Assembly (NCBI GenBank): GCA_002269645.1
Contig: NIVC01000730.1
Location: 191,975 to 255,974 of the forward strand
Length of the DNA stretch: 64,000 nucleotides
Direction: 5' to 3'
DNA from: Macrostomum lignano
Taxonomy: Eukaryota
Positions 6,091-34,602 of the stretch are shown here, in pieces (positions within the stretch are counted from its first letter, which is position 1; each line of letters begins with the position of its first letter). The notes beneath the pieces are model-generated. The model was not told where the DNA came from. It was given only the letters and a program-made list of their open reading frames with translations, and did not search any database. The translations under genes and the position numbers were made by a program.

Positions 6091-6269
6091 TTTTTAAAAA
6101 GTCTTTTAGTTTTCCTGACGTTGAAAAGCTTTAATTAAAGAAATTATACTCTATGAAAATTCGAACCATCGTTGCTGCATTTAGCAGTTCAGTTTGTTCA
6201 CCTCTAGGCTAGCTCTCATCGTTTTGATATCATCAAATTTTTCACTTATATAATTTAACACTTTAAAAT

Positions 6270-9240: not shown

Positions 9241-9399
9241 TTGAGTATTTTATTCTCGACAGACAGCTTTTTTTATGGTTGACATGGTGATTCTTTTGTC
9301 GCTTTTTCTTGTGTTGAGTTTTTTTCTGTATAAAGTAGCATTTATTAAAATCTTACTTTTCAATTAATTACTCAGAAAAACAAAGAAAAAACAGGTAAA

Positions 9400-9728
9400 C
9401 ACTTTAGCAATGGTTTACCATCACTTTAGCAATGGTTTACCATCACTTTAGCAATGGTTCACCAGCAGTTTAGCAATGGTTTAGCATCACTTTAGCAATG
9501 GTTCACCAGCAGTTTAGCAATGGTTTAGAATCACTTTAGCAATGGTTCACCAGCAGTTTAGCAATGGTTCACCAGTAGTTTAGCAATGGTTCACCATCAC
9601 TTTAGCAATGGTTTACCATCACTTTAGCAATGGTTTACCATCACTTTAGCAATGGTTCACCAGCAGTTTAGCAATAGTTCACCAGCAGTTTAGCAATGGT
9701 TCACCAGCAGTTTAGCAATGGGTTCACC
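9400..9728. repeat. 22-bp minisatellite (TTTAGCAATGGTTCACCAGCAG / ...TTTACCATCAC), ~15 units; copies at 18284-18612 and 27161-27489
   Basis: Period 22 read directly. Confidence 0.95.
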
Positions 9729-10827: not shown

Positions 10828-10907
10828 CGCTGCGAGGTAGACTCGAACCTGGGACCTTACGCCTATCCTAAAACTGGTCCTAGTGCCTACAGTGCGGCTA
10901 CTCCGCC
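10828..10907 (-). mobile_element. tRNA-like/SINE head a (copies 19712-19791, 28588-28668)
   Basis: Minus strand GGCGGAG-TAGCCGCACTGTAGG (A-box-like) ... GGTTCGAGTC (B-box); the cloverleaf does not close properly. Confidence 0.5.
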
Positions 10908-11430
10908 TATTGATCGGAGGGCGACAAAATCAGCCATATATGCTTTGGCATTGCAGTCAAATACACAGCAGTGATAGGCTGCTTAGTGCACGGGTTGTAT
11001 GCAGGCAGAGCCAATGCGCAGTTAAGTAAAATCTATAAATTAGATTTAAGTCTGGAGGAACTAATTCACAGTCTGCAGTTCTTCTCTGGCCGGCACCTCA
11101 ATCCCCTCAGAAAACTGCAATTTGCTCAGAATTGTACGGCTCACTAATCAATTTTCGATACATATCGGCAGTCTTGAAAAGCTCAGCATTTAGCAGCATT
11201 GTCTGCAGTTTAGTAATTTCGTACTTTTATGGAGCTAGACAATACCCATTGATGGATCAGTTATACTCGAAGCAGTTTTTACAAATCAAATTTGATTAGT
11301 GGCTAGTGCCGAGTAGCAAAAAATGAATTGCTAATTAATAAAAAAATGTTTCAATTGAAATTAAATAAAAAATGTTTCAATTTGTCCAGGCACAAGCTAT
11401 AAATTATTGAATTATTTTAATTTTAATTAT

Positions 11431-11513
11431 CCACCGGGGAGGCAGACTCGAACCTTGGACCTTACGTCTAGCCTAAACCTAGTCCTAAGTGCCTACACTG
11501 CGGCTACTCCGCC
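11431..11513 (-). mobile_element. tRNA-like/SINE head b (copies 20316-20398, 29193-29275)
   Basis: Diverged paralogue of head a inside an older ~600-bp internal duplication; A-box-like and GGTTCGAGTC B-box retained. Confidence 0.5.
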
Positions 11514-12120
11514 TATTGATGGGAGGACAACAAAATCAGCCATATATCCTTCAGAACTGCAGTTAAAATACATAGCAGTGATAGGCTGCTCAGTGTGTAG
11601 GCGTGCAGGCGGAGCCAATGCACAGTTGATTGAGTGAAATCTATAAATAGCAATTTTCTATGGAGTCCGCCAGTCAGAGCCAGGGTCAGAATGTACACAC
11701 GCAGCCACTGAGCATTTTTTCTCCTTGCACACTGCAACCAGTATTGAAGCTTACACAGTGGAGAGAGAAAAGTTATGGCGCAATCATAATTGGAATTGGA
11801 ATTCAGCCAGTCCAGTCAAGAATTCAACCTAGTTTGCCCTACCATTAAAAGCATTGGGAAAACTCGTTTTTCGAATATTTAATACCTTTAGCATTAAAGC
11901 CGATTAAAGAAATTTTAACTGTCTTCTTTCCAGATAATTACAAATCTTTTTGTAAAAACGCGATTAAAATTGGTCAATTGGTTCTATCTCTAGAACGTTA
12001 TGCAAATACCAACACAAATTCTCTTCGAGTGAAAGCCACACGAAGCAGCTATGACATAATCAAATACTCAGGCAGTCAGCATCAGTCTCAATTAAAGTTA
12101 GCAATATGGTTACGCAATTT

Positions 12121-12169
12121 ATTATTATTATTATTTATTTTTATTATTTATTATTATTATTAATTATTA
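12121..12169. repeat. (ATT)n-rich junction filler 1
   Basis: 49-bp A/T-only insert between unit 1 end and unit 2 start; absent from both outer breakpoints. Confidence 0.9.
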
Positions 12170-15100: not shown

Positions 15101-18100
15101 CTCATCGTTTTGATATCATCAAATTTTTCACTTATATAATTTAACACTTTAAAATCCAAGCATAAAGTAAATCACACGAAGCAGTTATGACATAATCAGT
15201 TTCTCAGTCAGTTAGTATCAGTTAACAATATGGTTACGCAATTTAAATCAAGTCTGGTGCTACGCTTCCACACTGTATTTTCAATTCAAGTCGGAGTTAC
15301 AATTCAGTTATGATGCAATCTATTTCAGAATCAGAATTCAACCAGTCAGTTTTTTCTCTAGCATTCTTAGAATGTATTTTTCAAGTCGAAAGAGCTGCTT
15401 GACCTTTGCAAAAAAGCATGTTTTTCGAATATTTAATGCCTTAAGCATCGAGCAATTTCTTAGCCACGATGCATGTACAGTCACGGGAAAATTTCTGATC
15501 GAACAGTGCAAGTTCGAACAAAATCGGTCCAGCCATTTTTTCTCTAATCGATCACATAGATAGATAGACACAGACAGACAATTTTTAGTATATAGGACTA
15601 GCCATTTAGCCCCCCGCTGGGGAGCCTTAAAAATGACACCCCAGCATTTAAAATGAAAGTGGTTTTTATTTTGGCCCAAGAGTATATAACCTTACTAATT
15701 ATCCAAAATGTTGATTTCCATTCATCAAAAATTACTTTTTTTGATTTTTGGCAAAGATAAATTGCCATGAATCAAAACTTTCACCAGCCAAAAAAGTTTC
15801 CGACATCAGCCTAAAACCCTTTCTCAATCAGCGAATAATGCCTATCCTTTCAAGCACAAACTCTTAGTGCATATCGTCATTGGCCTGGGCATATTCTGAT
15901 CCGCAGCAAATATGCAAATCATTGACGGCCTTAGACCCTCTTTTAATTAGCCTACATCAAAGAATGAAACCTTTAATAGATGCGCTGGTATGTCCTATTA
16001 GCAGAAATCAGCATCACTTGTGTGTACAATTTCATTATCTGAATTACATTAGGTACTTCAGCCGTACTACCTGACTATCTGACAATCGCCCAACAACCTA
16101 ACATCCCCCAACAATTCAGCCATCGTCCATGAGCCTTGGCATCTTAGCAATTCCCCTCCCCCCCAGTAAGCCTTGACATATCAGCAATTCTCCCAGTAAG
16201 CCTTTACATCTCAGCAATTCCCCCAGTAAGCCTTGAAATCTCACCAATTCCCCCAGTAAGCCTTGACATCTCAGCAATTCCACCAGTAAGCCTTGACAAG
16301 AATTGCTAAGAATTGCTAAGAATACTTGGCTAACAATTGCTAATACTTGCAAGAATTGCTGAGAAGCCTTGAGATCTCAGCAGTTCCCCCAGTAAGCATT
16401 GATATCTCAGCATTCCCCCAGTAAGCCTTGAAATCTCAGCATTCCCCCAGAAAGCCTTCACATCTTAGCAATTCCCAGTAAGACTTGACAATTCATCAAT
16501 TCCCCCAGAAAGCCTTGACATCTCAGCAGTTCCCCCATTAAGCATCGACATCGCAGAAATTAAACTCGAGCCTTGACATCTACGCAGTTCTCTCAGCCGA
16601 GTAAGCCTTGACATCCCAACAACTCAACTCCCCTCCCCCAAGAATTCAGCAATCCCCTTATGAGCCTTGATATCTCAGCAATTTCTTCATGAGCCTTGTC
16701 AACTCAGCGATTCCATCCATGAGCTTTGATATCTTAGCAACTCCCATCTTAGCAAGTCTTTAGTTGATGGCAAGTCCTTGGTTGATGGTTAACAGAGTGG
16801 TTATTCTATGATTAAACCAAAACTGACCCTAAGCCCCTAACCCTAACCCATAAGTGAGTCTTGGCATGTTAGCAATCTCCCCCGTGAGCCTTGAGCCTGA
16901 GCATTTAAGTAACTTCCTCATAAGCTTTGAAATCTAAATTTCACCGAAAGCCTTAAACTGTCAGCAATTTCCGAAGAGCCAAGGCATATAACTAATTCGA
17001 CCCTTTAATCTTAGAAATTCCTTAATGAATCATTTATGATTGACACGACGATGGCTCTATAATTGAACTCAAACCCTAACCCTTAACCTGCAGCCGAGTC
17101 ACAGCATTTCAGCAACTCCTTCTCAGCTCAAGAATGTCAGAAATTCCCCAATGAGCTTTTGAAATCTTAGCAATTTTCCCATGAGCATGAAAATTTAGCG
17201 ACTAACCTTTTGATATCTTGGCACTTTCACACGAGTCTTATGATTGAACCCTAACCCTGCCAAGTCACAGCATTTCAGCAATTCCCACTATGAACCACAG
17301 CATTTCAACAATTACCCAATGAACCTTGACATTTCCTGAATTTCAGCTATTCCCTTTAGGAGCCTTTGAAATCTCAGCCATTCCCCTGTGAACCTTAGTA
17401 TCTCAGCAATACCTAAGAGTCACAGCCTACAGCATTACAGGGATCCCCCGTGAGCTTTGAAATCTCAACTATTCCCAATGAGCCTTGATATCTCAGCAAC
17501 TCCTATTTGAGGCAATATCCCCATGTTTTGCAATCACAGCAATTCCCCCTGAGCCTTGAGCCACAGTATATTTCAGATACCCCCCATGAGCCTTGACATT
17601 CCCTAATGAGTATTTTATGTAAGACAGGCCTATTCATTTATATGGTTTACGTCTTACTCTTACCCTAAAAATGTCGGCAATTCCCCAAGAGCCACAGCAT
17701 TCCAGAAATTATCTCCATGAGCCTTGACAGCAAATAATTTTAATGAGCCTTGATACCTCAGCAATTTCTCAAATGAACTTTGAAATCAAAGCAATTCTGC
17801 CCAGAATCACATCAGTATATGAATTTCCCTCTGAGCCTTGACAAGACATCTCCGAATTTCTCCCATGGGCCTTGATCTGGCCCATGGCCCAGTAAGCCTT
17901 GAAATCTCAATAATTCCCTAGTAAGCCTTGACATCTCAGAAATTCCCTCATTAAGATCGACATCGCAGCAATTGAACTCAAGCTTTGAAATCAAAGCAAT
18001 TCTCCCCAGAATCACTGGAATCGAATCCCCAGAATCGCTGAGCCTTGAGATCTTAGAAATTCTCCCATGAGTCTTGATATCACAGAAATTTCCCATACCA

Positions 18101-21005
18101 GCCTTGAAATCTTAGCAATTCACATTGAGTATTTTATTCTCGACAGACAGCTTTTTTTATGGTTGACATGGTGATTCTTTTGTCGCTTTTTCTTGTGTTG
18201 AGTTTTTTTCTGTATAAAGTAGCATTTATTAAAATCTTACTTTTCAATTAATTACTCAGAAAAACAAAGAAAAAACAGGTAAACACTTTAGCAATGGTTT
18301 ACCATCACTTTAGCAATGGTTTACCATCACTTTAGCAATGGTTCACCAGCAGTTTAGCAATGGTTTAGCATCACTTTAGCAATGGTTCACCAGCAGTTTA
18401 GCAATGGTTTAGAATCACTTTAGCAATGGTTCACCAGCAGTTTAGCAATGGTTCACCAGTAGTTTAGCAATGGTTCACCATCACTTTAGCAATGGTTTAC
18501 CATCACTTTAGCAATGGTTTACCATCACTTTAGCAATGGTTCACCAGCAGTTTAGCAATAGTTCACCAGCAGTTTAGCAATGGTTCACCAGCAGTTTAGC
18601 AATGGGTTCACCGGCACTATTCCGCAAAATCTGCATAGGATACAATCATTATTGTCACAGGTCACAAAGATAAATTCGCTGCTTCAATGCAGGCTCGAAC
18701 TGCTGACATCAAAGCATTCTGCTTAGCTTCTGCCGGATACTGCCTGCCTACTGCGGCTGTTTTGCCTATTGACATGTGGTCGAAATAATCTAGTTTAGCA
18801 ACTTCAGCCGTTTGAAGTTAACCCCCAGAAATAGGCATTTATCCCTACAACAACCTGAAATTATTTCTGCATTAATCCCGCAAAAAGACTGCAGTTATTT
18901 CTTAGCAGCCGGCATTTATCATCCACTTTTTTTAAAACTTTTATTAAAATTAAGAATGCATGCCCTCAGCGGCATAGAATTGTCCCCTTAGCCAAAAATA
19001 TTTCACTTAGCAGCCGCAGAAATCCCCTAAACAACTTGTACTTAATCTTCCACAGTAAATATCCACTCAAAACTCAATAGTTAGTTATAAGCCTCAGAAG
19101 TCTGCCATTATCCTTTAATTAGTCCGCAGTTTTCCCTCTCAGCAGTCTGCAGCTATACGCTCATACGTCTGGAGGAACTACCTCAGCAGTTTGCAGTTGT
19201 TTCCACTTTGCAATCTGCAATGATCCCTTCGACAGTCTGCAGTTCCCCTCAGCAGTCTGCAGTCATTTCATTTTCAGTCTACAAGTGTTCAATTAACAAT
19301 TTTCAGTCATCCTCTCAGCAGCCTGCAGTTCTTCTCTCAGCCGGCTCCTCAGTCTCCTCTGCAAACTGCAATTTGCTCAGAATTGTACGGCTCACTAATC
19401 AATTTTCGATACATATCGGCAGTTTTGAAAATCTCAGCATTTAGCAATACCTTCAGCAGTTTTTTTCAGAATCGTCTGCAGTTTAGCAATTTCATACTTT
19501 CATGGAGCTAGGCAATATACCCATTGATGGGATCAGTACGCTCGTAATACATGTACTTGAAGCAGTTTCTACAAATCAAATTTGCTTATCGACTTGTGCC
19601 AAACAGCAAAAATACGTGTAGTTCATTAAGTGTGCCTTGTTAATTAAGCATAAAAGTTTCAATTAGTCGAAGCACAAGCTAAAATAAATAATTAGTTCAA
19701 TTTTAATTGTCCGCTGCGAGGTAGACTCGAACCTGGGACCTTACGCCTATCCTAAAACTGGTCCTAGTGCCTACAGTGCGGCTACTCCGCCTATTGATCG
19801 GAGGGCGACAAAATCAGCCATATATGCTTTGGCATTGCAGTCAAATACACAGCAGTGATAGGCTGCTTAGTGCACGGGTTGTATGCAGGCAGAGCCAATG
19901 CGCAGTTAAGTAAAATCTATAAATTAGATTTAAGTCTGGAGGAACTAATTCACAGTCTGCAGTTCTTCTCTGGCCGGCACCTCAATCCCCTCAGAAAACT
20001 GCAATTTGCTCAGAATTGTACGGCTCACTAATCAATTTTCGATACATATCGGCAGTCTTGAAAAGCTCAGCATTTAGCAGCATTGTCTGCAGTTTAGTAA
20101 TTTCGTACTTTTATGGAGCTAGACAATACCCATTGATGGGATCAGTTATACTCGAAGCAGTTTTTACAAATCAAATTTGATTAGTGGCTAGTGCCGAGTA
20201 GCAAAAAATGAATTGCTAATTAATAAAAAAATGTTTCAATTGAAATTAAATAAAAAATGTTTCAATTTGTCCAGGCACAAGCTATAAATTATTGAATTAT
20301 TTTAATTTTAATTATCCACCGGGGAGGCAGACTCGAACCTTGGACCTTACGTCTAGCCTAAACCTAGTCCTAAGTGCCTACACTGCGGCTACTCCGCCTA
20401 TTGATGGGAGGACAACAAAATCAGCCATATATCCTTCAGAACTGCAGTTAAAATACATAGCAGTGATAGGCTGCTCAGTGTGTAGGCGTGCAGGCGGAGC
20501 CAATGCACAGTTGATTGAGTGAAATCTATAAATAGCAATTTTCTATGGAGTCCGCCAGTCAGAGCCAGGGTCAGAATGTACACACGCAGCCACTGAGCAT
20601 TTTTTCTCCTTGCACACTGCAACCAGTATTGAAGCTTACACAGTGGAGAGAGAAAAGTTATGGCGCAATCATAATTGGAATTGGAATTCAGCCAGTCCAG
20701 TCAAGAATTCAACCTAGTTTGCCCTACCATTAAAAGCATTGGGAAAACTCGTTTTTCGAATATTTAATACCTTTAGCATTAAAGCCGATTAAAGAAATTT
20801 TAACTGTCTTCTTTCCAGATAATTACAAATCTTTTTGTAAAAACGCGATTAAAATTGGTCAATTGGTTCTATCTCTAGAACGTTATGCAAATACCAACAC
20901 AAATTCTCTTCGAGTGAAAGCCACACGAAGCAGCTATGACATAATCAAATACTCAGGCAGTCAGCATCAGTCTCAATTAAAGTTAGCAATATGGTTACGC
21001 AATTT
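12170..21005. repeat. Tandem triplication unit 2
   Basis: Near-identical to unit 1; differs by homopolymer lengths, a few transitions and the centre of the 23-bp array. Confidence 0.97.
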
Positions 21006-21054
21006 ATTATTATTATTATTTATTTTTATTATTTATTATTATTATTAATTATTA
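21006..21054. repeat. (ATT)n-rich junction filler 2
   Basis: Same sequence as 12121-12169. Confidence 0.9.
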
Positions 21055-24000
21055 TTCAGTAATTCTCTCTGAGAGTCATTATAGCACTACTACAGCATTA
21101 TAGCGATTCCCTGCAAGTCTCGACATCGTTGGGATTCCCAAATGAATCTCTTAACTTCGACATGAAGCTTCTTTTATTTTTTACATTACGCTTTTTTATC
21201 AGCGATCCCTCCCCTGAGGAGGCATCAAATAATGTAATAAAAAGTTTTCAATAAACTATATGTAGCTTCTGACTTTAGCCTTGAAATCTCATTTATACCC
21301 CCGTGAGCCTTGACATCTCAGCTATTCCCCCCGTAAGCCTTAACATGTCAGCGATGGCCCCCATAAACCTTGAAATCTAAAAAATCCCCTGTTATTCTGT
21401 TAACCTTGAAACCCGATAAAATATAACCCTCAACCCACACCTGACCTAAACCTAACTTTAACCCAACCTAAAGCCTTGAAATCTCAGCAATTCTTCTCCC
21501 CTAAGCCTTGACATTTTAGTGATTCGATCCTTCTTTAAGAATCACAGCACTATAACGATTTCCACCAAGCTTTGACATCGTAGCAATTCCCAAATGAATC
21601 TTTTAACTTCGACATGACTTTTCTTTTATGTATACGTAGTGCTACTTAGTGCTACTAGCTGATAGACTCTGCTTCTATCAGCGCCCCCCCCGTGGCGAGC
21701 CAACAAAGAATGCAATAAAAAATTGAGTAAAGTACATGAACTTTGAAGTAGCTTCTGACTTTTGCTTTGACATCTCAGAAACCGCCCCCCCGTAATCTCA
21801 GTTTTTCTCTAAGAGCCTTGACGTCTCAGTAATTCTCCCCAGCACAGCATTATAGCTTCATTTAATTTTTACATGACACCCTTCATGTCTGACATGACGC
21901 TTCTTTTATTCTAGCATGATGCTTCTTATAATATTTTAAATGACACTTTCATTAGTTTTTAAATGAGGCTTCTATGATTTTTTCATGACGCTTCTATGAT
22001 TTTTTACATGACGCTTCTATGATTTTTTACATGACGCTTCTATGATTGTTTACATTACGCTTCTATGATTGTTTACATGACGCTTCTATGATTTTTATAT
22101 GACGCTTCTATGATTGTTTACATAGCGCTTCTATGATTGTTTACATGACGCTTCTATGATTTTTAAATGACGCTTCTATGATTTTTTCATGACGCTTCTA
22201 TGATTGTTTACATGACGCTTCTATGATTGTTTACATGACGCTTCTATGATTTTTATATGACGCTTCTACGATTTTTTACCTGGCGCTTCTATGATTGTTT
22301 ACATGACGCTTCTATGATTTTTAAATGAGGCTTCTTTATTGTTTACATGACGCTTCTATGATTGTTTACATGACGCTTCTATGATTTTTTACATGACGCT
22401 TCTATGATTCATTACATGACGCTTCTATGATTTTTTACATGACGCTTCTATGATTTTTATCTGACGCTTTTACGATTTTTACATGACGCTTCTATGATTG
22501 TTTACATGACGCTTCTATGATTGTTTACATGACGCTTCTATGATTTTTACATGACGCTTCTATGATTTTTACATGACGCTTCTATGATTTTTTCATGACG
22601 CTTCTATGATTTTTTACATGACGCTTCTATGATTGTTTACATGACGCTTCTATGATTTTTACATGACGCTTCTATGATTTTTACATGACGCTTCTATGAT
22701 TTTTTCATAGACGCTTCTATGATTTTTACATGACGCTTCTATGATTTTTAATGACGCTTCTATGATTTTTACATGACGCTTCTATGATTGTTTACATGAC
22801 GCTTCTATGATTGTTTACATGACGCTTCTATGATTTTTTATGACGCTTCTATGATTTTTACATGACGCTTCTATGATTTTTACATGACGCTTCTATGATT
22901 TTTACATGACGCTTCTATGATTTTTATATGACGCTTCTATGATTGTTTACATGACGCTTCTATGATTGTTTACATGACGCTTTTGTGATTTTTACATGAC
23001 GCTTCTATGATTTTTTACATGACGCTTCTATGATTTTTTCATGACGCTTCTATGATTTTTTAAAAATGACGCTTCTATGATTTTTATATAACGCTTCTGC
23101 GATTTTTTACATGGCGCTTCTATGATTGTTTACATGACGCTTCTATGATTTTTTAAATGACGCTTCTATGATTTTTTAAATGACGCTTCTATGATTTTTT
23201 ACATGGCGCTTCTATGATTGTTTACATGACGCTTCTATGATTTTTGACATGACGCTTCTACGATTTTTTACATGGCGCTTCTATGATTGTTTACATGACG
23301 CTTCTATGATTTTTTATATGACGCTTCTATGATTGTTTACATGACGCTTCTATGATTTTTTATATGACGCTTCTATGATTGTTTACATGACGCTTGTATG
23401 ACTGTTTACATGACGCTTCTATGATTGTTTACATGACGCTTCTATGATTGTTTACATGAAGCTTCTATGATTGTTTACATGACGCTTCTATGATTTTTTA
23501 TATGACGCTTCTATGATTGTTTACATGACGCTTCTATGATTTTTTATATGACGCTTCTATGATTGTTTACATGACGCTTCTATGATTGTTTACATGACGC
23601 TTCTATGATTGTTTACATGACGCTTCTATGATTGTTTACATGAAGCTTCTATGATTGTTTACATGACGCTTCTATGATTTTTTAAAAATGACGCTTCTAT
23701 GATTTTTATATAACGCTTCTGCGATTTTTTACATGGCGCTTCTATGATTGTTTACATGACGCTTCTATGATTTTTCAAATGACGCTTCTATGATTTTTTA
23801 CATGGCGCTTCTATGATTGTTTACATGACGCTTCTATGATTTTTACACGACGCTTCTTTTTAAAAAGTCTTTTAGTTTTCCTGACGTTGAAAAGCTTTAA
23901 TTAAAGAAATTATACTCTATGAAAATTCGAACCATCGTTGCTGCATTTAGCAGTTCAGTTTGTTCACCTCTAGGCTAGCTCTCATCGTTTTGATATCATC

Positions 24001-27000
24001 AAATTTTTCACTTATATAATTTAACACTTTAAAATCCAAGCATAAAGTAAATCACACGAAGCAGTTATGACATAATCAGTTTCTCAGTCAGTCAGTATCA
24101 GTTAACAATATGGTTACGCAATTTAAATCAAGTCTGGTGCTACGCTTCCACACTGTATTTTCAATTCAAGTCGGAGTTACAATTCAGTTATGATGCAATC
24201 TATTTCAGAATCAGAATTCAACCAGTCAGTTTTTTCTCTAGCATTCTTAGAATGTATTTTTCAAGTCGAAAGAGCTGCTTGACCTTTGCAAAAAAGCATG
24301 TTTTTCGAATATTTAATGCCTTAAGCATCGAGCAATTTCTTAGCCACGATGCATGTACAGTCACGGGAAAATTTCTGATCGAACAGTGCAAGTTCGAACA
24401 AAATCGGTCCAGCCATTTTTTCTCTAATCGATCACATAGATAGATAGACACAGACAGACAATTTTTAGTATATAGGACTAGCCATTTAGCCCCCCGCTGG
24501 GGAGCCTTAAAAATGACACCCCAGCATTTAAAATGAAAGTGGTTTTTATTTTGGCCCAAGAGTATATAACCTTACTAATTATCCAAAATGTTGATTTCCA
24601 TTCATCAAAAATTACTTTTTTTGATTTTTGGCAAAGATAAATTGCCATGAATCAAAACTTTCACCAGCCAAAAAAGTTTCCGACATCAGCCTAAAACCCT
24701 TTCTCAATCAGCGAATAATGCCTATCCTTTCAAGCACAAACTCTTAGTGCATATCGTCATTGGCCTGGGCATATTCTGATCCGCAGCAAATATGCAAATC
24801 ATTGACGGCCTTAGACCCTCTTTTAATTAGCCTACATCAAAGAATGAAACCTTTAATAGATGCGCTGGTATGTCCTATTAGCAGAAATCAGCATCACTTG
24901 TGTGTACAATTTCATTATCTGAATTACATTAGGTACTTCAGCCGTACTACCTGACTATCTGACAATCGCCCAACAACCTAACATCCCCCAACAATTCAGC
25001 CATCGTCCATGAGCCTTGGCATCTTAGCAATTCCCCTCCCCCCAGTAAGCCTTGACATATCAGCAATTCTCCCAGTAAGCCTTTACATCTCAGCAATTCC
25101 CCCAGTAAGCCTTGAAATCTCACCAATTCCCCCAGTAAGCCTTGACATCTCAGCAATTCCACCAGTAAGCCTTGACAAGAATTGCTAAGAATTGCTAAGA
25201 ATACTTGGCTAACAATTGCTAATACTTGCAAGAATTGCTGAGAAGCCTTGAGATCTCAGCAGTTCCCCAGTAAGCATTGATATCTCAGCATTCCCCCAGT
25301 AAGCCTTGAAATCTCAGCATTCCCCAGAAAGCCTTCACATCTTAGCAATTCCCAGTAAGACTTGACAATTCATCAATTCCCCCAGAAAGCCTTGACATCT
25401 CAGCAGTTCCCCCATTAAGCATCGACATCGCAGAAATTAAACTCGAGCCTTGACATCTACGCAGTTCTCTCAGCCGAGTAAGCCTTGACATCCCAACAAC
25501 TCAACTCCCCTCCCCAAGAATTCAGCAATCCCCTTATGAGCCTTGATATCTCAGCAATTTCTTCATGAGCCTTGTCAACTCAGCGATTCCATCCATGAGC
25601 TTTGATATCTTAGCAACTCCCATCTTAGCAAGTCTTTAGTTGATGGCAAGTCCTTGGTTGATGGTTAACAGAGTGGTTATTCTATGATTAAACCAAAACT
25701 GACCCTAAGCCCCTAACCCTAACCCATAAGTGAGTCTTGGCATGTTAGCAATCTCCCCCGTGAGCCTTGAGCCTGAGCATTTAAGTAACTTCCTCATAAG
25801 CTTTGAAATCTAAATTTCACCGAAAGCCTTAAACTGTCAGCAATTTCCGAAGAGCCAAGGCATATAACTAATTCGACCCTTTAATCTTAGAAATTCCTTA
25901 ATGAATCATTTATGATTGACACGACGATGGCTCTATAATTGAACTCAAACCCTAACCCTTAACCTGCAGCCGAGTCACAGCATTTCAGCAACTCCTTCTC
26001 AGCTCAAGAATGTCAGAAATTCCCCAATGAGCTTTTGAAATCTTAGCAATTTTCCCATGAGCATGAAAATTTAGCGACTAACCTTTTGATATCTTGGCAC
26101 TTTCACACGAGTCTTATGATTGAACCCTAACCCTGCCAAGTCACAGCATTTCAGCAATTCCCACTATGAACCACAGCATTTCAACAATTACCCAATGAAC
26201 CTTGACATTTCCTGAATTTCAGCTATTCCCTTTAGGAGCCTTTGAAATCTCAGCCATTCCCCTGTGAACCTTAGTATCTCAGCAATACCTAAGAGTCACA
26301 GCCTACAGCATTACAGGGATCCCCCGTGAGCTTTGAAATCTCAACTATTCCCCAATGAGCCTTGATATCTCAGCAACTCCTATTTGAGGCAATATCCCCA
26401 TGTTTTGCAATCACAGCAATTCCCCCTGAGCCTTGAGCCACAGTATATTTCAGATACCCCCATGAGCCTTGACATTCCCTAATGAGTATTTTATGTAAGA
26501 CAGGCCTATTCATTTATATGGTTTACGTCTTACTCTTACCCTAAAAATGTCGGCAATTCCCCCAAGAGCCACAGCATTCCAGAAATTATCTCCATGAGCC
26601 TTGACAGCAAATAATTTTAATGAGCCTTGATACCTCAGCAATTTCTCAAATGAACTTTGAAATCAAAGCAATTCTGCCCAGAATCACATCAGTATATGAA
26701 TTTCCCTCTGAGCCTTGACAAGACATCTCCGAATTTCTCCCATGGGCCTTGATCTGGCCCATGGCCCAGTAAGCCTTGAAATCTCAATAATTCCCTAGTA
26801 AGCCTTGACATCTCAGAAATTCCCTCATTAAGATCGACATCGCAGCAATTGAACTCAAGCTTTGAAATCAAAGCAATTCTCCCCAGAATCACTGGAATCG
26901 AATCCCCAGAATCGCTGAGCCTTGAGATCTTAGAAATTCTCCCATGAGTCTTGATATCACAGAAATTTCCCATACCAGCCTTGAAATCTTAGCAATTCAC

Positions 27001-29882
27001 ATTGAGTATTTTATTCTCGACAGACAGCTTTTTTTATGGTTGACATGGTGATTCTTTTGTCGCTTTTTCTTGTGTTGAGTTTTTTTCTGTATAAAGTAGC
27101 ATTTATTAAAATCTTACTTTTCAATTAATTACTCAGAAAAACAAAGAAAAAACAGGTAAACACTTTAGCAATGGTTTACCATCACTTTAGCAATGGTTTA
27201 CCATCACTTTAGCAATGGTTCACCAGCAGTTTAGCAATGGTTTAGCATCACTTTAGCAATGGTTCACCAGCAGTTTAGCAATGGTTTAGAATCACTTTAG
27301 CAATGGTTCACCAGCAGTTTAGCAATGGTTCACCAGTAGTTTAGCAATGGTTCACCATCACTTTAGCAATGGTTTACCATCACTTTAGCAATGGTTTACC
27401 ATCACTTTAGCAATGGTTCACCAGCAGTTTAGCAATAGTTCACCAGCAGTTTAGCAATGGTTCACCAGCAGTTTAGCAATGGGTTCACCGGCACTATTCC
27501 GCAAAATCTGCATAGGATACAATCATTATTGTCACAGGTCACAAAGATAAATTCGCTGCTTCAATGCAGGCTCGAACTGCTGACATCAAAGCATTCTGCT
27601 TAGCTTCTGCCGGATACTGCCTGCCTACTGCGGCTGTTTTGCCTATTGACATGTGGTCGAAATAATCTAGTTTAGCAACTTCAGCCGTTTGAAGTTAACC
27701 CCCAGAAATAGGCATTTATCCCTACAACAACCTGAAATTATTTCTGCATTAATCCCGCAAAAAGACTGCAGTTATTTCTTAGCAGCCGGCATTTATCATC
27801 CACTTTTTTTAAAACTTTTATTAAAATTAAGAATGCATGCCCTCAGCGGCATAGAATTGTCCCCTTAGCCAAAAATATTTCACTCAGCAGCCGCAGAAAT
27901 CCCCTAAACAACTTGTACTTAATCTTCCACAGTAAATATCCACTCAAAACTCAATAGTTAGTTATAAGCCTCAGAAGTCTGCCATTATCCTTTAATTAGT
28001 CCGCAGTTTTCCCTCTCAGCAGTCTGCAGCTATACGCTCATACGTCTGGAGGAACTACCTCAGCAGTTTGCAGTTGTTTCCACTTTGCAATCTGCAATGA
28101 TCCCTTCGACAGTCTGCAGTTCCCCTCAGCAGTCTGCAGTCATTTCATTTTCAGTCTACAAGTGTTCAATTAACAATTTTCAGTCATCCTCTCAGCAGCC
28201 TGCAGTTCTTCTCTCAGCCGGCTCCTCAGTCTCCTCTGCAAACTGCAATTTGCTCAGAATTGTACGGCTCACTAATCAATTTTCGATACATATCGGCAGT
28301 TTTGAAAATCTCAGCATTTAGCAATACCTTCAGCAGTTTTTTTCAGAATCGTCTGCAGTTTAGCAATTTCATACTTTCATGGAGCTAGGCAATATACCCA
28401 TTGATGGGATCAGTACGCTCGTAATACATGTACTTGAAGCAGTTTCTACAAATCAAATTTGCTTATCGACTTGTGCCAAACAGCAAAAATACGTGTAGTT
28501 CATTAAGTGTGCCTTGTTAATTAAGCATAAAAGTTTCAATTAGTCGAAGCACAAGCTAAAATAAATAATTAGTTCAATTTTAATTGTCCGCTGCGAGGTA
28601 GACTCGAACCTGGGACCTTACGCCTATCCTAAAACTGGTCCTAGTGCCTACAGTGCGGCTACTCCGCCTATTGATCGGAGGGCGACAAAATCAGCCATAT
28701 ATGCTTTGGCATTGCAGTCAAATACACAGCAGTGATAGGCTGCTTAGTGCACGGGTTGTATGCAGGCAGAGCCAATGCGCAGTTAAGTAAAATCTATAAA
28801 TTAGATTTAAGTCTGGAGGAACTAATTCACAGTCTGCAGTTCTTCTCTGGCCGGCACCTCAATCCCCTCAGAAAACTGCAATTTGCTCAGAATTGTACGG
28901 CTCACTAATCAATTTTCGATACATATCGGCAGTCTTGAAAAGCTCAGCATTTAGCAGCATTGTCTGCAGTTTAGTAATTTCGTACTTTTATGGAGCTAGA
29001 CAATACCCATTGATGGGATCAGTTATACTCGAAGCAGTTTTTACAAATCAAATTTGATTAGTGGCTAGTGCCGAGTAGCAAAAAATGAATTGCTAATTAA
29101 TAAAAAAATGTTTCAATTGAAATTAAATAAAAAATGTTTCAATTTGTCCAGGCACAAGCTATAAATTATTGAATTATTTTAATTTTAATTATCCACCGGG
29201 GAGGCAGACTCGAACCTTGGACCTTACGTCTAGCCTAAACCTAGTCCTAAGTGCCTACACTGCGGCTACTCCGCCTATTGATGGGAGGACAACAAAATCA
29301 GCCATATATCCTTCAGAACTGCAGTTAAAATACATAGCAGTGATAGGCTGCTCAGTGTGTAGGCGTGCAGGCGGAGCCAATGCACAGTTGATTGAGTGAA
29401 ATCTATAAATAGCAATTTTCTATGGAGTCCGCCAGTCAGAGCTAGGGTCAGAATGTACACATGCAGCCACTGAGCATTTTTTCTCCTTGCACACTGCAAC
29501 CAGTATTGAAGCTTACACAGTGGAGAGAGAAAAGTTATGGCGCAATCATAATTGGAATTGGAATTCAGCCAGTCCAGTCAAGAATTCAACCTAGTTTGCC
29601 CTACCATTAAAAGCATTGGGAAAACTCGTTTTTCGAATATTTAATACCTTTAGCATTAAAGCCGATTAAAGAAATTTTAACTGTCTTCTTTCCAGATAAT
29701 TACAAATCTTTTTGTAAAAACGCGATTAAAATTGGTCAATTGGTTCTATCTCTAGAACGTTATGCAAATACCAACACAAATTCTCTTCGAGTGAAAGCCA
29801 CACAAAGCAGCTATGACATAATCAAATACTCAGGCAGTCAGCATCAGTCTCAATTAAAGTTAGCAATATGGTTACGCAATTT
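21055..29882. repeat. Tandem triplication unit 3
   Basis: Near-identical to units 1 and 2; continues into unique sequence after gcaattt at 29882. Confidence 0.97.
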
Positions 29883-30400
29883 CTGTCTTTCAACTTGGCA
29901 CAGTGTTTTCAACTTGTAGTGATGCAATCTTTATCAAAATCAGAATTCAGTCAGTCGGTTTTTTCTCTAGCATTTTTACAGCGCATTTCAAGTCGAAAGA
30001 GCTGCTTGACCTTTGCAAAAAAGCATGTTTTTCGAATATTTAATCCCTTTAGCATTGAAGCAGATTAAAGAAATTTTAACCGTCTTCTTTCCAGACAATT
30101 TTGAATCTTTTGGCGAAAACGCGATGAAAATCGGTGAAGAATTGCAATCTGTAGAGCGTTATGGACAAACATACAAACAAACAAACAAACCTTAGAGATT
30201 TAGTATATTTATTAGAGATTTAGTATATTTAGATTATTATTATTATTATTATTTATTAGATAGATAGAAGATTAGAAGATAGATTAGATAGATAGATTTA
30301 GATTAGATAGAAGATAGAAGATAGATTAGATGGACATTCATTCAAACATACAAACCTTAGAGATTTAGTATATTTAGATTTACAAAACACTTGCTTAAAA
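29627..30400 (+). mobile_element. HINE-like element cut by the right breakpoint of the triplication
   Basis: Homologous to 6345-6560. Has a ~400-bp internal duplication (29627 vs 30026), an (ACAA)n microsatellite and repeated agagatttagtatatttagat ends. Confidence 0.5.
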
Positions 30401-30612
30401 TATGTAAATATATAGAAGTTGTTTAGGCCTAGGTCCAATGAATACAGAGGATATAGCAGTTTTTGGAACTTTGTAGTATTAGGCCTACTAGCTACTTTTG
30501 CAATAGGCTAAAGCATTATTCAGTAGTAGTATATTGTAAATTAATATCCCCATTGATTTTTTATTGTCTAGTATAAATAGATAATTGGATTAACACAATA
30601 AGTACCTTTGAC

Positions 30613-31256
30613 TAGTGTTCTACCATAGCCATAGCTATTGCTACGGGATCCTATAGCAAATATGGTAAAATAGATGCTTATGGCAACTATGGATGTGCCT
30701 ATGGTAGTTAGCTACTCTTATGGCTACAACTACGGAAATATGGTAGTTGCTGTCACTGTCACATTCTATAGTATAGATTCCTGTTACCATAGACATAGTT
30801 ATTAATTTAAAAAAATGGAAAAATACTAGAAACAGGTAGAATAAAACAAAGATACTTTAGTAAGCTGTATTATCAACTTAGAAACTTATAGAATATAGTA
30901 TATACCTAATAAAGTACAATAAAACACTAGCAAACTCTAATTTTTATTAATGTAAAAAAGTTCAGCATTAGTATTTTCAGTAGCGATTAAGTATTTATTG
31001 CTTTGTAAAAAGACAAAATGTAATCTTCCAAAGGCAATTGAGTGTTTCTTTTATTTTCTAAATTAATTTGCAGTTGTTTAAGCACTAGGTTATCTTCTTG
31101 ATTCAAAAAATTTTGTTTTATAGACTTTTTAAAACTATGGCTATGACTATGGGAACTATGGTAATATTGGTATCCCTATGGCTATGGATTATGGAGAGTT
31201 GGAATAAGCCATAGTTTTGATCATGGTACATAGACCCTCTTTACAGTAGAACACTG
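30613..31256. mobile_element. hAT-type MITE, 644 bp
   Basis: 8-bp TSD cctttgac at 30605-30612 and 31257-31264; TIRs tagtgttctac / gtagaacactg; subterminal CTAYGG repeats in inverted orientation. Confidence 0.85.
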
Positions 31257-31411
31257 CCTTTGACTATCTGCTTATTAGGCAAAAAGTCAAGCAATAATAG
31301 GCTTTTGGTATCCCATAAGATTGTCAATAAGATCTTGCTTGGATTGCACATAGTCTAACTTTAATAGTGCAATTTAACTCTCACTTTGATGGGATCATAG
31401 TGGTTTGATAA

Positions 31412-31676
31412 AGATTCTTGAAGATAAAAATGCTAGTATAAGATCTCAATCACCTATAAGCTTAAGATTAGAAAGCTTAGTCTTTGCTATAAATTATTTT
31501 TCTTTAAGTTGTCAGTCACTATCAATTATATTGAAAATATCTAGAATATCTAAGCTCTAGTTGATAGTGATTGACAATAGAAAGCAAAAGAATTTATAAC
31601 AGAGACTGTGCTTTTTTGATCTTTAGCTTATAATGTCATTGAAATCCTATACTAGCATCTCTATCTTCAAGAATCT
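31412..31676. repeat. Long imperfect inverted repeat (~120-bp arms, ~25-nt loop)
   Basis: 31412-31530 aligns to the reverse complement of 31556-31676 at roughly 80% identity (manual alignment). Confidence 0.85.
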
Positions 31677-32199
31677 GCCAAGTAGATCCTAAAATTTGAC
31701 AAAAATTATTATTTTATAATCAGCTTGATTAAGGATCATCTATAAGTGAGTTTATGCTTAAAGGTCATGCTTGAACTTAGGTACCCAATTTTAATAGGAT
31801 ATTTCAAAAGCCATCAAATTTAGATTCAAGAATTTGGTTTTGAGCCTTCTAGGGTCAAGGATTTGGTAATTGCTTTGTATTCAAATTTTAGATCTGAAGA
31901 ATTTTCCATGATAATGACAATTCATTTTCCATGAATAGCTAGAAATATTAAGGTATAATAGAAAATATGTAATACTCAGGGAGTTGAAAAAATTGTCATA
32001 GCCTTTTATTATATGGGTGTTTTGATCATGATTTTAGCACTATATTACCATTAGATCATAATCAAGTTTTAAACTTTTTAGTGTTCTTTATAAATTGATT
32101 TATATTTTTAGAAGTTTTATACCAATATAAGTCTTGTTGCCAGTACCTCCAAGCAAGAAAACCAGTAAAAACAAGACATTTTAACTTGAATCATTTAGA

Positions 32200-33190
32200 T
32201 ACTATCCATTGCCTGCAAGCATGTGCTAGCATCTTGCCATGCTAGGCTAGGTAGATAGATCTGTTCTAGTCCAGAGCAAATCCACCTAGCCTTAGAGAGA
32301 GGGCCTCTTGATAGCTATTGAAGCCCAAAAGTCATGTCCTAAATTAGTCACATAGGTTAGACAGTGACAAAGTGCTCTTATAGGAAATCCTGAAATAGTT
32401 GTGCAACATGCAATCAAGCATTGTCTATTTGCGAGCTGATCTCACTTAGTCAGACTAGGTTGAAACGAAAGTATGCCATAGGTTTATGATTCACTACACT
32501 AGAAATAGCTCACCATTTGCTAGGCATCTACCATCTCTGCGTGAGGCAATTTAATCAACTGAGAATTGCTTGTTGGCTGTGAACGTGACTATCAATAAGG
32601 ATTTCTACTTTGTAATGGCATTAAGGTACTGTTTCTGGGGCTCTCCTCTTTTAAACAAAGTCTTGTTCTTAGTCTTAATTCTATTAGCATCCCAATCCTA
32701 AGACACCCATGTCTCATCTTGTATATGCAAATTATACCTTGTCTCACATCTGTCTTTCCTTATCATTATCTCTGAGGTTGTGAGTTACCCATACTTAGCA
32801 TACCTATCTTAGCTATAGATCCTCTCAAAAGATACAAAGTATAGTGCTATGGTCCACTATTTAGCTGCTTAGCTAGATCACAAGATGAGAGGTGAGGATC
32901 CTCACAAACTATCTCCTTTACCTTTATGGCCAAGCGCTTCCCATATCTTATCAGTGGCATCTTTTATCCAGAATCTAGCAATATATGGTTTTCAGGGATA
33001 GAATATCATTGCCCCAAGCAGCTCAATCACCAAGCTTTAGGCAAGTAAGCCTGTGAAATTGAAAATGCATCTTATCAGGCTCAATGCTTTAACTGTGCTT
33101 TTCTTAGGCTCATTGCATGCCTTATAGACAAGGGTTTAGAGCTTGATTCCAAGTAAGTTTTTCATAGCAAGCCAGTTTGTTTATGGCCAT
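32200..33190 (-). pseudogene. Decayed mariner (Tc1/mariner, DD34D-like) transposase
   Basis: Motifs in correct order across frameshifts: HTH EDPHLSSCDLAKQL (32903-32862), WVTHNL = WVPHEL (32791-32774), DETWV (32718-32704), DNA*LHVA = DNARPH (32425-32402), DFW..KRP.L.G (32333 on). Many stops; TIRs not confidently located. Confidence 0.8.
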
Positions 33191-33626
33191 TTTTTATTTA
33201 AGTGAAAAAATTATGGATTATTAATTTTTGTAATTTATAGTTTAAACTGCAAATTTTGTTTAGCAAGAATGTATTAGATAATGCAAAAAAATATGTTTTA
33301 AATATAAATTATAACATATCCTTTGCAATTTTTATCTGTACAATGACTACAAATATTGAGGATCTATCTATAAGGTGGATTAAAAATTTAATGAGAACTA
33401 AATAATACATTCTATTAATGTGAAGCCTTTATGAACCTCCTTGGGCTATTGAGATTTGCTTTTAATAGAAGCTTTATTTGGCTATTGTATATTTATACAC
33501 AAAATTTGAACCTAAACAGCGTTTTATCTATAATTAACTGAAATTGCCATTTCTTTTCAGATTTTATTTATTTTCATTCAATGCAAAGCTATTGCATTGT
33601 TGGGATATTGGTCACTATAAAGCAAT

Positions 33627-34027
33627 ATGACAAGCTTGTCTGGTAAAGGCTTGGTCACTCTGACTGATCTTCCATATATGATACAGCTGCAGATACTTGC
33701 ATACCTGGACCTGCCAGAACTATTAAATAAAGTTGCACCTCTCAATAAATATTTTTATCATCTTGCTCATAATAGTAGGTTTTGGCAAAAGCTTGATTTC
33801 ACTAATTCTCAGTGTCATTTATCATTATCCTACTTGAGACAGCTACTTGGATTTGCACCATTGGCTAGCACTTTGATTTTGAGTCGGCAGGCCTGTGATA
33901 AAGCTGAATTATCAGATGATGTTGCAGATATTTTTGGTGAAGTGTTGCACCGATGCCCACAGCTCGTCTATCTGCAACTGGCATATTTAAGACCTAGTAA
34001 AGAAGCTCTTGCAGGATTATGCATTGG
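33627..34027 (+). CDS. F-box/LRR protein (FBXL family) exon 1, F-box domain
   Basis: LTDLPYMIQLQILAYLDLPELLNKVAPLNKYFYHLAHNSRFWQKLDF is an F-box; GT donor at 34028 (phase 2). Confidence 0.85.
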
Positions 34028-34602
34028 GTAAAGCTCTTGTTAATTTAAAGTTTGTACATGACGCTTCTACCCATCTTGTTTCATTTATATAATAATTTAT
34101 TATAATAAATTATCTTTCTTTCTGGCATTGTCTATCCTCCTTTAACTAGAAGGTAAAACAGCTTTCTACTTTCAGTTCAGTAGCAAAGAAGAATACATAA
34201 GCTATTTTATAAAAATAAAGGCAGCTGAAATCACTTTGATAAGTTTAGAAACCCAAGCTTGCAGGCGTAAAACAACTTGCTAATTGGTTCAGCAATAATG
34301 TACATTAGCCAGTCCACTGAAATGTACATGGCAGCTTTGGGCTGGAATTCCAAGAAAGGCACTAAAATTGGGGTGGGCGTGGGCTCCAACGTATTCGTGT
34401 GGAAAGGCGCAGTTAGAGGGTTTAACCTCGGGGGTAAGAGCCAATTAATGAGCCTTGGCTTTAAAAATACATGCAAATGTTTCTTTTCAACTTACTACTA
34501 AACTGAAAGTAGCTTACGCGGAAATGTGCTGCGTCACCCATCTAGTTATTCTAGTATCTGTGATCCACTCTGAGCACATTCCCACACGCTCTGTTCTGTC
34601 AG

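What the first reader, a model, noticed from the sequence alone, without database searches (positions are those of the whole stretch)
30400..34260. RIP-like C-to-T hypermutation field (CpG and CAG contexts) beside a repeat island in an animal genome
Seen: about 9 CpG in 30421-33600 and none in 30985-32430. In a 180-bp sample (32221-32400) TAG+CTA outnumber CAG+CTG about 21 to 4. The hAT MITE TIRs differ by transitions (cagtg to tagtg; inferred ccgtag to ccatag or ctgtaa). The mariner motifs are altered in the C-to-T/G-to-A direction (DNARPH to DNA*LH, inferred R to C/H in the HTH). Established: CpG decay of methylated TEs is ordinary. CpA-to-TpA mutation that spreads into flanks is the hallmark of fungal RIP (RID and DIM-5/DIM-2 pathways), and mammalian DNMT3B makes mCAG. 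Inference: a germline non-CG methylation/deamination or RIP-like genome-defence process may act on this repeat island, which I do not know to be described in animals.
Basis: partly seen in the sequence, partly recalled or inferred. Interest (0 to 1): 0.85.

Follow-up and report, generated by a model that had tools for sequence, protein, structure and literature searches.

The report
CpG-decayed methylated island in flatworm
An old, transposon-derived stretch upstream of an F-box gene in the flatworm Macrostomum lignano has lost almost all its CpGs through ordinary methyl-cytosine decay, not through fungal-style repeat-induced mutation, but it also lacks CAG/CTG in a way that hints at non-CpG methylation and is worth testing.

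Summary
The window is the last 64 kb of Macrostomum lignano contig NIVC01000730.1.

Two paralogous copies of the locus (L001, L003) carry the same AT-rich field. They differ from the window by only 2.0-2.6%, against 1.7-2.0% in the flank. The field therefore predates the copies, and there has been no hypermutation since.

Substitutions polarised across the three copies show CpG C>T at 10 of 22 sites inside the domain (about 2530-2965 and 31160-34260) against 13 of 469 outside (p=3e-9). This is what germline CpG methylation predicts.

The neighbouring 3 x 8.9-kb array is 99.6% identical between units and keeps its CpGs. It is absent from both paralogues, so it is a young insertion into an older field. 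RIP-like targeting of repeats is refuted, and the CpA index (1.44-1.52) is also not RIP-like. The "mariner" is not detectable.

What remains unexplained is a symmetric CWG deficit. The T:C ratio is 3.2 at CAG and 3.1 at CTG, against 1.44 in other non-CpG contexts (p=2e-4). It is found only in CpG-poor windows, including a segment with no homology to the rest. Substitution counts are too few to show its cause.

The parts
2300..2987 (.). Left part of the ancestral AT-rich field, poor in CpG and CWG (GC 0.37, CpG o/e 0.25, TAG+CTA 45 against CAG+CTG 15).
   Evidence: Homologous to L001 3598-4216 and L003 4111-4549. In L001 it abuts the homologue of window 30379 directly.
2988..30378 (.). Young 27.4-kb insertion that splits the field. 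It contains the tandem array 3278-29882 (three 8.89-kb units, 99.6% identical). CpG and CWG content are normal.
   Evidence: Absent from L001 and L003. The units differ by only 22 substitutions. The CpG of its 23-bp minisatellite is kept in 81-85 of 86 units.
30379..33626 (.). Right part of the field: non-coding and TE-derived, with GC 0.318 and CpG o/e 0.11. The T:C ratio is about 3.1 at CAG and CTG and 1.44 in other non-CpG contexts.
   Evidence: Present in all three copies of the locus at 97.4-98.0% substitution identity.
30613..31257 (.). hAT-type MITE (645 bp) with 11-bp TIRs (TAGTGTTCTAC / CAGTGTTCTAC) and subterminal CCATAG/CTATGG repeats. Two repeats still read CTACGG.
   Evidence: The 8-bp target-site duplication CCTTTGAC lies at 30605-30612 and 31258-31265. 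The change CTACGG to CTATGG at 31185 is polarised to the window copy.
31412..31676 (.). 265-bp palindromic (foldback or long-TIR) element whose arms are about 78% complementary.
   Evidence: Of about 12 transition mismatches between the arms, 3 are at CWG/TWG or CWG/CWA pairs.
32150..33000 (-). It has many stops in every frame and its identity is not supported.
   Evidence: No Pfam hit and no PDB hit. E=13 against an intact M. lignano mariner. Only a faint 10-bit, non-collinear match to a mariner HMM.
33627..34260 (+). Exon 1 (33627-34031) and the start of intron 1 of an F-box/LRR gene. This is the 3' part of the CpG-hypermutable domain, whose boundary lies near 34260.
   Evidence: F-box-like Pfam hit. 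The gene is BOX15_Mlig026460g1, P0002. CpG C>T is 3/8 here and 5/74, 3/82 and 2/134 further downstream.

Best explanation
**What it is.** The field is an old block of transposon debris. It holds a hAT MITE, a foldback element and unidentifiable remnants. It lies upstream of, and runs into, the 5' end of an F-box gene of Macrostomum lignano.

**How it works.** The block is cytosine-methylated in the germline. Spontaneous deamination of 5-methylcytosine has removed almost every CpG and is still removing those that remain. A general C-to-T excess, about 2.5 times the T-to-C rate, has carried the block to its AT-rich equilibrium.

**What it is not.** It is not hypermutated and it is not triggered by repeats. 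The 27-kb tandem array beside it is a later insertion that the process has not touched.

**The extra layer.** On top of the CpG decay there is a symmetric CAG/CTG deficit that co-localises with the CpG deficit. The most economical reading is weaker non-CpG (CWG) methylation by the same machinery, followed by the same deamination.

**Shown:** the composition, the CpG hypermutability, the age relative to the array, and the absence of excess divergence.

**Inferred:** that methylation is the cause, and that the CWG deficit shares that cause.
For: **Organism and copies.**
- The window is from M. lignano: L002 matches window 23627-45771 at 100%.
- All three copies of the locus carry the field.

**Polarised substitutions.**
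- CpG C>T is 10/22 inside the domain and 13/469 outside (odds ratio 29, p=2.7e-9).
- The boundary is sharp near 34260.
- Non-CpG C>T is 26/786 in the field and 30/1973 in the flank (p=0.004). T>C is 1.24% against 1.3%.
- The transition equilibrium is 1.2/(1.2+3.0) = GC 0.29, against about 0.32 observed.

**No hypermutation and no repeat targeting.**
- Divergence between copies is 2.0-2.6% in the field and 1.7-2.0% in the flank.
- The array is young, unmutated and absent from the paralogues.

**CWG signature.**
- T:C is 3.18 at CAG and 3.09 at CTG, and 0.95-1.98 in the other nine non-CpG contexts (p=2e-4).
- The index is raised in 8 of 10 CpG-poor windows, including L001:1-500, which has no homology to the rest of the field.
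- It is not raised in 15 AT-rich windows with normal CpG.

**Literature.** M. lignano retains DNMT1 and DNMT3 and has low 5mC levels. The genome-wide pattern is undescribed (PMC11292947, PMC9246332, PMC10658182).
Against: - No methylation data were available, so methylation is inferred from mutability alone.
- There are only 22 CpG sites in the domain, and only one locus (three copies of common descent).
- The CWG rate in polarised substitutions is 4/84 against 22/702 for other non-CpG cytosines (p=0.51). The data cannot show that CWG is mutating faster now.
- The flank used for comparison is partly coding, which may hold down its C>T counts.
- No family consensus could be built for any element in the field, so the older substitution history has not been observed.
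Confidence: 0.7

Rival explanations
1. A RIP-like genome defence. Duplicated DNA is recognised and riddled with C-to-T transitions at CpA/CAG and CpG, and the mutation spreads from the repeat island into its flank.
For: TpA/ApT is 0.94-1.01 in the field, above the window average of 0.82. TAG is enriched and CAG depleted.
Against: - (CpA+TpG)/(ApC+GpT) is 1.44-1.52, and CA/TG o/e is 1.10, so CpA is not depleted.
- The true repeats are 99.6% identical, differ by only 22 substitutions, and keep their CpGs.
- The array was inserted after the field existed.
- The triplicated locus shows no excess divergence.
- An intact mariner 3 kb upstream in L001 has CpG o/e 0.8-0.97.
Confidence: 0.03
2. The CWG deficit is not regional. 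It would reflect a species-wide, context-dependent neutral mutation spectrum that shows only in the oldest unconstrained DNA. It coincides with CpG loss simply because both take time.
For: The field is at compositional equilibrium. Most of the rest of the window is young minisatellite, recent insertion or coding DNA. Of the five substitutions among the young array units outside the minisatellite, three are CAG<->TAG, even though the array's CpGs are not decaying.
Against: In the flank, CWG C>T (7/468) equals other non-CpG C>T (23/1505). Fifteen AT-rich windows with normal CpG have a median CWG index of 0.69, although their ages are unknown.
Confidence: 0.15
3. The composition is inherited. The particular transposons that make up the field were TAG-rich, CAG-poor and CpG-poor when they inserted, and no regional process is needed.
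For: The MITE's subterminal CCATAG repeats and the (TAGA)n microsatellite supply many TAGs that were there from the start. Pattern-selected metagenome sequences that resemble the MITE end, with no wider similarity to the window, also begin with TAGTG.
Against: - CpG hypermutability is measured directly on the present sequence.
- The same twin deficit is seen in at least six sub-segments with no detectable similarity to one another, and in L001:1-500, which has no homology to them.
- The domain runs into exon 1 of a host gene.
Confidence: 0.08
4. Editing by an AID/APOBEC-type single-strand DNA deaminase during transposition or transcription.
For: There is a general excess of C>T over T>C in the field.
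Against: - There is no TC, CC or WRC signature. AGC/GCT and AGCT are enriched rather than depleted, and GC o/e is 1.60.
- The effect is close to strand-symmetric (TAG 66, CTA 42; CAA 51, TTG 54).
- It covers several different elements and host sequence alike.
- There is no burst of divergence.
Confidence: 0.03

Closest known systems
CpG decay of germline-methylated DNA in animals (5mC deamination; mosaic invertebrate methylomes maintained by DNMT1/DNMT3)
   Same: CpG o/e is 0.11. CpG transitions are about 29 times more frequent (odds ratio) than in neighbouring DNA. The domain boundary is sharp. The organism retains DNMT1 and DNMT3.
   Different: Most invertebrates methylate the bodies of active genes. 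Here the domain covers transposon debris, an upstream region and only the first exon. It also carries a CWG deficit that CpG methylation alone does not predict, because CpG decay should create CAG/CTG, not remove it.
Plant CHG methylation (chromomethylase CMT3, symmetric CAG/CTG) and mammalian DNMT3B mCAG
   Same: The cytosine deficit is specific to C(A/T)G. Both predicted products (TAG/CTA and CAA/TTG) are gained. The deficit co-localises with the CpG-methylation footprint on transposon-derived DNA.
   Different: Chromomethylases are not known in animals. Mammalian mCAG is asymmetric (CAG is much more methylated than CTG), whereas here the two contexts are equally depleted. No methylation data or enzyme survey could be obtained here.
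Fungal repeat-induced point mutation (RID, DIM-2)
   Same: The region is AT-rich, TpA is raised, and transposon relics carry stop codons.
   Different: It is not directed at repeats, CpA is not depleted, there is no hypermutation between copies, and adjacent near-identical repeats are untouched.
Reported non-CpG (CpA) methylation in parasitic flatworms (Schistosoma mansoni, Taenia solium)
   Same: It is the same phylum, and the claim is also that cytosine methylation lies outside CpG (PMC3710501, PMC10658182).
   Different: Parasitic flatworms are reported to have lost DNMT1 and DNMT3 (PMC9246332), although PMC10658182 describes the DNMT genes as conserved in T. solium, and the S. mansoni methylation claim is disputed. 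Those reports rest on bisulfite signals. M. lignano keeps DNMT1 and DNMT3, and the evidence here is an evolutionary footprint, not a methylation measurement.

Membership tests
Fungal-type RIP | Acts on duplicated sequences (longer than about 0.4 kb and more than about 80% identical) and leaves them strongly diverged by transitions. | tested here: not met
   The three 8.9-kb units are 99.6% identical and differ by 22 substitutions. The three copies of the locus differ by 2.0-2.6% in the field and 1.7-2.0% in the flank.
Fungal-type RIP | CpA-to-TpA bias: (CpA+TpG)/(ApC+GpT) below about 1.03 and TpA/ApT above about 0.89 (thresholds recalled from the Neurospora literature). | tested here: not met
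   The first index is 1.44-1.52 and fails. TpA/ApT is 0.94-1.01 and passes, but it is not specific in AT-rich DNA.
Fungal-type RIP | RID/DIM-2-type methyltransferase present in the genome. | not testable with these tools
Germline CpG-methylated domain (5mC decay) | CpG depletion relative to base composition. | tested here: met
   CpG o/e is 0.11 over 30379-33626 and 0.25 over 2300-2987, against 0.84 in the background sample.
Germline CpG-methylated domain (5mC decay) | CpG transitions many times more frequent than other transitions and than CpG transitions in unmethylated neighbours. | tested here: met
   10/22 inside the domain against 13/469 outside, p=2.7e-9.
Germline CpG-methylated domain (5mC decay) | DNMT1 and DNMT3 present in the organism. 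| not tested
   Taken from the literature only: PMC11292947 and PMC9246332 state that M. lignano keeps both.
Germline CpG-methylated domain (5mC decay) | 5mC actually present at the locus. | not testable with these tools
   No methylome data were available. The primary report (Wasik et al. 2015) is not in the held library.
CWG (CHG-type) cytosine methylation | Loss of C in both CAG and CTG, with gain of TAG/CTA and CAA/TTG. | tested here: met
   T:C is 3.18 at CAG and 3.09 at CTG, against 1.44 pooled over other contexts (p=2e-4). Markov-1 z scores are -3.0, +2.1 and +2.7.
CWG (CHG-type) cytosine methylation | A measurably higher CWG>TWG substitution rate than at other non-CpG cytosines. | tested here: inconclusive
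   4/84 against 22/702 in the field (p=0.51). Three of 5 substitutions between array units are at CAG/TAG. Three of about 12 transitions between foldback arms are at CWG.
CWG (CHG-type) cytosine methylation | An enzyme with CWG specificity (a chromomethylase or a DNMT3 with that flank preference) and direct mCWG signal. | not testable with these tools
   No genome-wide protein search remained, and no methylome was available.
hAT-superfamily MITE (30613-31257) | 8-bp target-site duplication and short TIRs that begin YAGNG. | tested here: met
   The TSD CCTTTGAC flanks both ends. The TIRs are TAGTGTTCTAC and CAGTGTTCTAC.
Tc1/mariner element (32150-33000) | Recognisable DD(D/E) transposase homology. 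| tested here: not met
   Pfam gave no hit and PDB gave no hit. BLASTP against the L001 mariner gave E=13. An HMM of 120 mariner transposases scored 10 bits, non-collinear, whereas the L001 copy scored 564 bits.
AID/APOBEC editing | Strand-asymmetric C>T in TC, CC or WRC motifs. | tested here: not met
   AGC/GCT and AGCT are enriched, the effect is close to strand-symmetric, and the context is C(A/T)G or CpG.

The most novel reading that the evidence does not exclude
Macrostomum lignano methylates cytosines in the symmetric CWG context as well as at CpG, within discrete islands that cover transposon-derived DNA. Deamination of both marks has left a heritable double footprint (loss of CpG and of CAG/CTG). 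This would be CHG-like methylation in an animal germline, readable from sequence alone.
Probability: 0.3. Interest if true: 0.75.

Novelty: new variant of a known kind. Interest (0 to 1): 0.42.

Why it matters
Where the low-level 5mC of M. lignano sits in the genome is undescribed in the literature I could reach. A 2022 review says the pattern is unknown for any free-living flatworm.

This locus gives a sequence-only prediction of a sharply bounded methylated island:
- It lies over transposon debris and a gene's 5' end, not over a gene body.
- It leaves a neighbouring young tandem array untouched.

If the co-localised CAG/CTG deficit is caused by methylation, it would be symmetric non-CpG methylation with mutational consequences in an animal germline. 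It would also bear on the disputed reports of non-CpG methylation in flatworms.

If the deficit instead turns out to be a species-wide context bias, the finding reduces to ordinary CpG decay.

Tried and rejected
**Mariner identification.** The pseudo-translation of 32150-33000 found nothing:
- in the word-indexed protein search;
- in Pfam;
- in PDB;
- against an intact M. lignano mariner.

**Family consensus for the field's transposons.**
- No other copies exist in the window, L001 or L003.
- A metagenome scan with the MITE end pattern returned three sequences with no wider similarity to the window, sharing only the terminal and subterminal motif.
- The clusters of the mariner protein hits held only short metagenome contigs and no M. 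lignano genomic loci.

**More copies of the locus.** Looking up the neighbouring 228-aa gene returned only the window's own contig.

**Other lines.**
- Rfam and tRNA scans of the window were empty.
- A CCWGG (Dcm-like) context was considered. CCAGG and CCTGG are absent from the field, but fewer than two of each are expected, so nothing can be concluded.
- The primary methylation report for M. lignano is not held.


Full report
**Where the window comes from.** The F-box/LRR gene at 33627-35771 matches a Macrostomum lignano protein. The locus fetched for its cluster member P0002 is 100% identical to window 23627-45771. The window is therefore the last 64 kb of contig NIVC01000730.1 of assembly GCA_002269645.1.

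Two further contigs carry paralogous or homeologous copies of the locus: L001 (NIVC01000305.1) and L003 (NIVC01004673.1). According to reviews, M. lignano retains DNMT1 and DNMT3 and has low 5mC levels. The genomic pattern of methylation is undescribed (PMC11292947, PMC9246332, PMC10658182).

**The observation.**
- There are nine CpGs in 30421-33600.
- There are none in 30985-32431. This is the longest CpG-free run in the window, with about 35 expected at o/e 1.
- TAG+CTA is 21 against CAG+CTG 4 in 32221-32400.

Over 30379-33626, GC is 0.318, CpG o/e is 0.11, TAG+CTA is 189 and CAG+CTG is 51. The other long CpG-free runs are minisatellites whose repeat unit has no CG.

Compared with first-order Markov simulations of 31260-33600:
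- CAG/CTG is depleted (38 against 60.3, z -3.0).
- TAG/CTA is enriched (z +2.1).
- CAA/TTG is enriched (z +2.7).

These are the two products expected if C is lost from CAG and CTG on either strand.

Some of the TAG excess is not mutational. A (TAGA)n-like microsatellite lies at 30255-30331. The hAT MITE at 30613-31257 carries subterminal CCATAG/CTATGG repeats. Two of these still read CTACGG. One CTACGG-to-CTATGG change is polarised to the window copy. That is plain CpG decay.

The MITE itself is confirmed by an 8-bp target-site duplication, CCTTTGAC.

The "mariner" is not confirmed by any of the tests:
- Pfam gave no hit.
- PDB gave no hit.
- A word-indexed protein search found nothing.
- Direct comparison with an intact M. 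lignano mariner found in L001 gave E=13.
- A profile built from 120 mariner transposases gave 10 bits and a non-collinear match, against 564 bits for the L001 element.

**Age and relation to the repeat island.** The tandem array spans 3278-29882, in three 8.89-kb units that are 99.6% identical. It is absent from both paralogous loci. In L001 the homologue of window ...2987 abuts the homologue of window 30379 directly.

Window 2300-2987 has the same composition as the field: CpG o/e 0.25, TAG+CTA 45 and CAG+CTG 15. The field was therefore once a single block of about 4 kb, and a 27.4-kb insertion later split it.

The inserted array shows no sign of attack:
- Only 22 substitutions distinguish the three units.
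- The single CpG of its 23-bp minisatellite is retained in 81-85 of 86 units, although other positions vary.

L001 and L003 each carry their own private insertions in the field. The field is thus a landing pad for insertions, not a product of the repeats.

**Is the field hypermutating?** The three copies were aligned with MAFFT, and each substitution was polarised by majority among them.

Substitution-only divergence is 2.0-2.6% in the field (31160-33378) and 1.7-2.0% in 8 kb of flank. There is no hypermutation since the copies separated.

The spectrum, however, differs sharply at CpG. C>T occurred at 10 of 22 CpG sites in the domain (2530-2965 and 31160-34260) and at 13 of 469 outside it (odds ratio 29, p=2.7e-9).

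Non-CpG C>T is about twice as frequent as in the flank (26/786 against 30/1973, p=0.004). T>C is equal (1.24% against 1.3%). The transition equilibrium is GC 0.29, close to the 0.32 observed.

The simplest account is a germline-methylated island in which 5mC deamination is still removing CpGs, within DNA that has reached its AT-rich neutral equilibrium.

**Why it is not RIP-like.**
- The classical CpA index (CpA+TpG)/(ApC+GpT) is 1.44-1.52. RIP gives values below about 1.03. CA/TG o/e is 1.10.
- The real repeats beside the field are untouched.
- The triplicated locus has not diverged faster than its flanks.
- An intact mariner 3 kb upstream in L001 has normal CpG content.
- Deaminase editing is also unlikely. 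The motifs that AID or APOBEC would deplete are enriched, and the effect is close to strand-symmetric.

**What remains unexplained.** The T:C ratio was computed for each three-base context in 31258-33250. It is 3.18 at CAG and 3.09 at CTG. In the nine other non-CpG contexts it is 0.95-1.98, or 1.44 pooled (Fisher p=2e-4 on halved counts). In non-coding, non-tandem background from the same window it is 0.70 and 1.19.

CpG decay cannot cause this, because CGG-to-CAG and CCG-to-CTG changes would add CWG rather than remove it.

The index (TWG/CWG divided by the T:C ratio of the other contexts) behaves as follows:
- It exceeds 1.6 in 8 of the 10 windows with CpG o/e below 0.3 (median 1.90).
- One of these is L001:1-500, which has no detectable homology to the rest of the field.
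- Its median is 0.63 in 59 windows with CpG o/e of 0.3 or more (Mann-Whitney p=3e-5).
- Its median is 0.69 in 15 AT-rich windows with normal CpG.

The CWG deficit therefore follows the CpG deficit, not AT-richness. It is also present in each of six sub-segments of the field that have no detectable similarity to one another.

Direct rate evidence is too thin to settle the cause:
- CWG C>T is 4/84 against 22/702 for other non-CpG cytosines (p=0.51).
- Three of about 12 transition mismatches between the foldback arms are at CWG.
- Three of the five substitutions between array units outside the minisatellite are CAG<->TAG.

Three readings remain open:
- CWG methylation that accompanies CpG methylation (about 0.3).
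- A species-wide context bias visible only in old neutral DNA (about 0.15).
- Composition inherited from the elements themselves (below 0.1).

**Comparison with known systems.** The CpG part is standard animal 5mC decay. It is unusual only in its placement, over transposon debris and a gene's 5' end rather than a gene body, and in being the first locus-level indication I could find for this species.

The CWG part resembles plant CHG methylation in its symmetry and mammalian DNMT3B mCAG in its enzyme class. It meets the compositional criterion only. The enzymatic and direct-methylation criteria could not be tested.

Non-CpG methylation has been claimed for S. mansoni and T. solium (PMC3710501, PMC10658182). 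One review reports that parasitic flatworms have lost DNMT1 and DNMT3 (PMC9246332), although PMC10658182 describes the DNMT genes as conserved in T. solium, and the S. mansoni methylation claim is disputed.

**Verdict.** The RIP-like, repeat-triggered hypermutation is refuted, and the mariner evidence is not reproducible.

Interest is moderate. The solid part is ordinary. The CWG coupling is a specific, cheap-to-test lead.

Noticed in passing
window 2375-2382, 2872-2879, 30424-30431, 30480-30487; L001 142-149; L003 6045-6056 against window 31351: The palindromic octamer TAGGCCTA occurs 5 times in about 4.4 kb of field, with about 0.04 expected. L003 has an extra AGGCCT where the window and L001 have none, giving TA-GG-CC-TA. 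This looks like the excision footprint of a TA-targeting Tc1/mariner-type element. In CpG-normal DNA the same core occurs as CAGGCCTG (33888, 35365, 53038).
   Followed up: partly
L001 1572-2836: An apparently intact mariner element: 55-nt TIRs that are 93% complementary, TA on both flanks, and a 337-aa match to a mariner HMM (E=1e-172). CpG content is normal. Proteins 95% identical to it occur on short ENA and JGI metagenome contigs.
   Followed up: partly
window 2988-30378 (array 3278-29882): A 27.4-kb insertion made of three 8.89-kb units (99.6% identical), each full of minisatellites. It is absent from both paralogous loci. Its left edge lies next to an interstitial telomere-like (CTAACC)n at 3211-3266.
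   Followed up: partly
window 38600-40400 (228-aa single-exon gene 39617-40303): There is only 1 substitution in 836 aligned sites among the three copies of the locus, against 2-4% in every neighbouring block. This suggests recent gene conversion or very strong constraint.
   Followed up: no
window 6327, 10124, 11681, 11700, 12042 (unit 1 coordinates): Outside the 23-bp minisatellite, the only five substitutions among the three array units are two CpG>TpG and three CAG<->TAG changes. The numbers are tiny, but the contexts are the same as in the field.
   Followed up: partly
L001 4330-6979; L003 4549-5262 and 8091-9747: Each paralogous copy has its own private insertions inside the field, and one in L003 is CpG-rich with TIR-like ends. 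The field is a recurrent insertion target.
   Followed up: no
L005 5813-5834, L006 560-581, L007 1277-1298 (JGI metagenome contigs): Three contigs with no wider similarity to the window carry TAGTGTTCTAC followed by YRTAGC repeats, like the MITE end. This suggests a widespread hAT terminal and subterminal motif whose first base is T.
   Followed up: partly
window 35807-36313 and 40427-41004: Related 28-31-bp minisatellites (CCAGCCTCCCAGATCCTCAGTTGCTGGG-like) lie downstream of the F-box gene and of the 228-aa gene. Their open frames are artefacts of the repeats.
   Followed up: no
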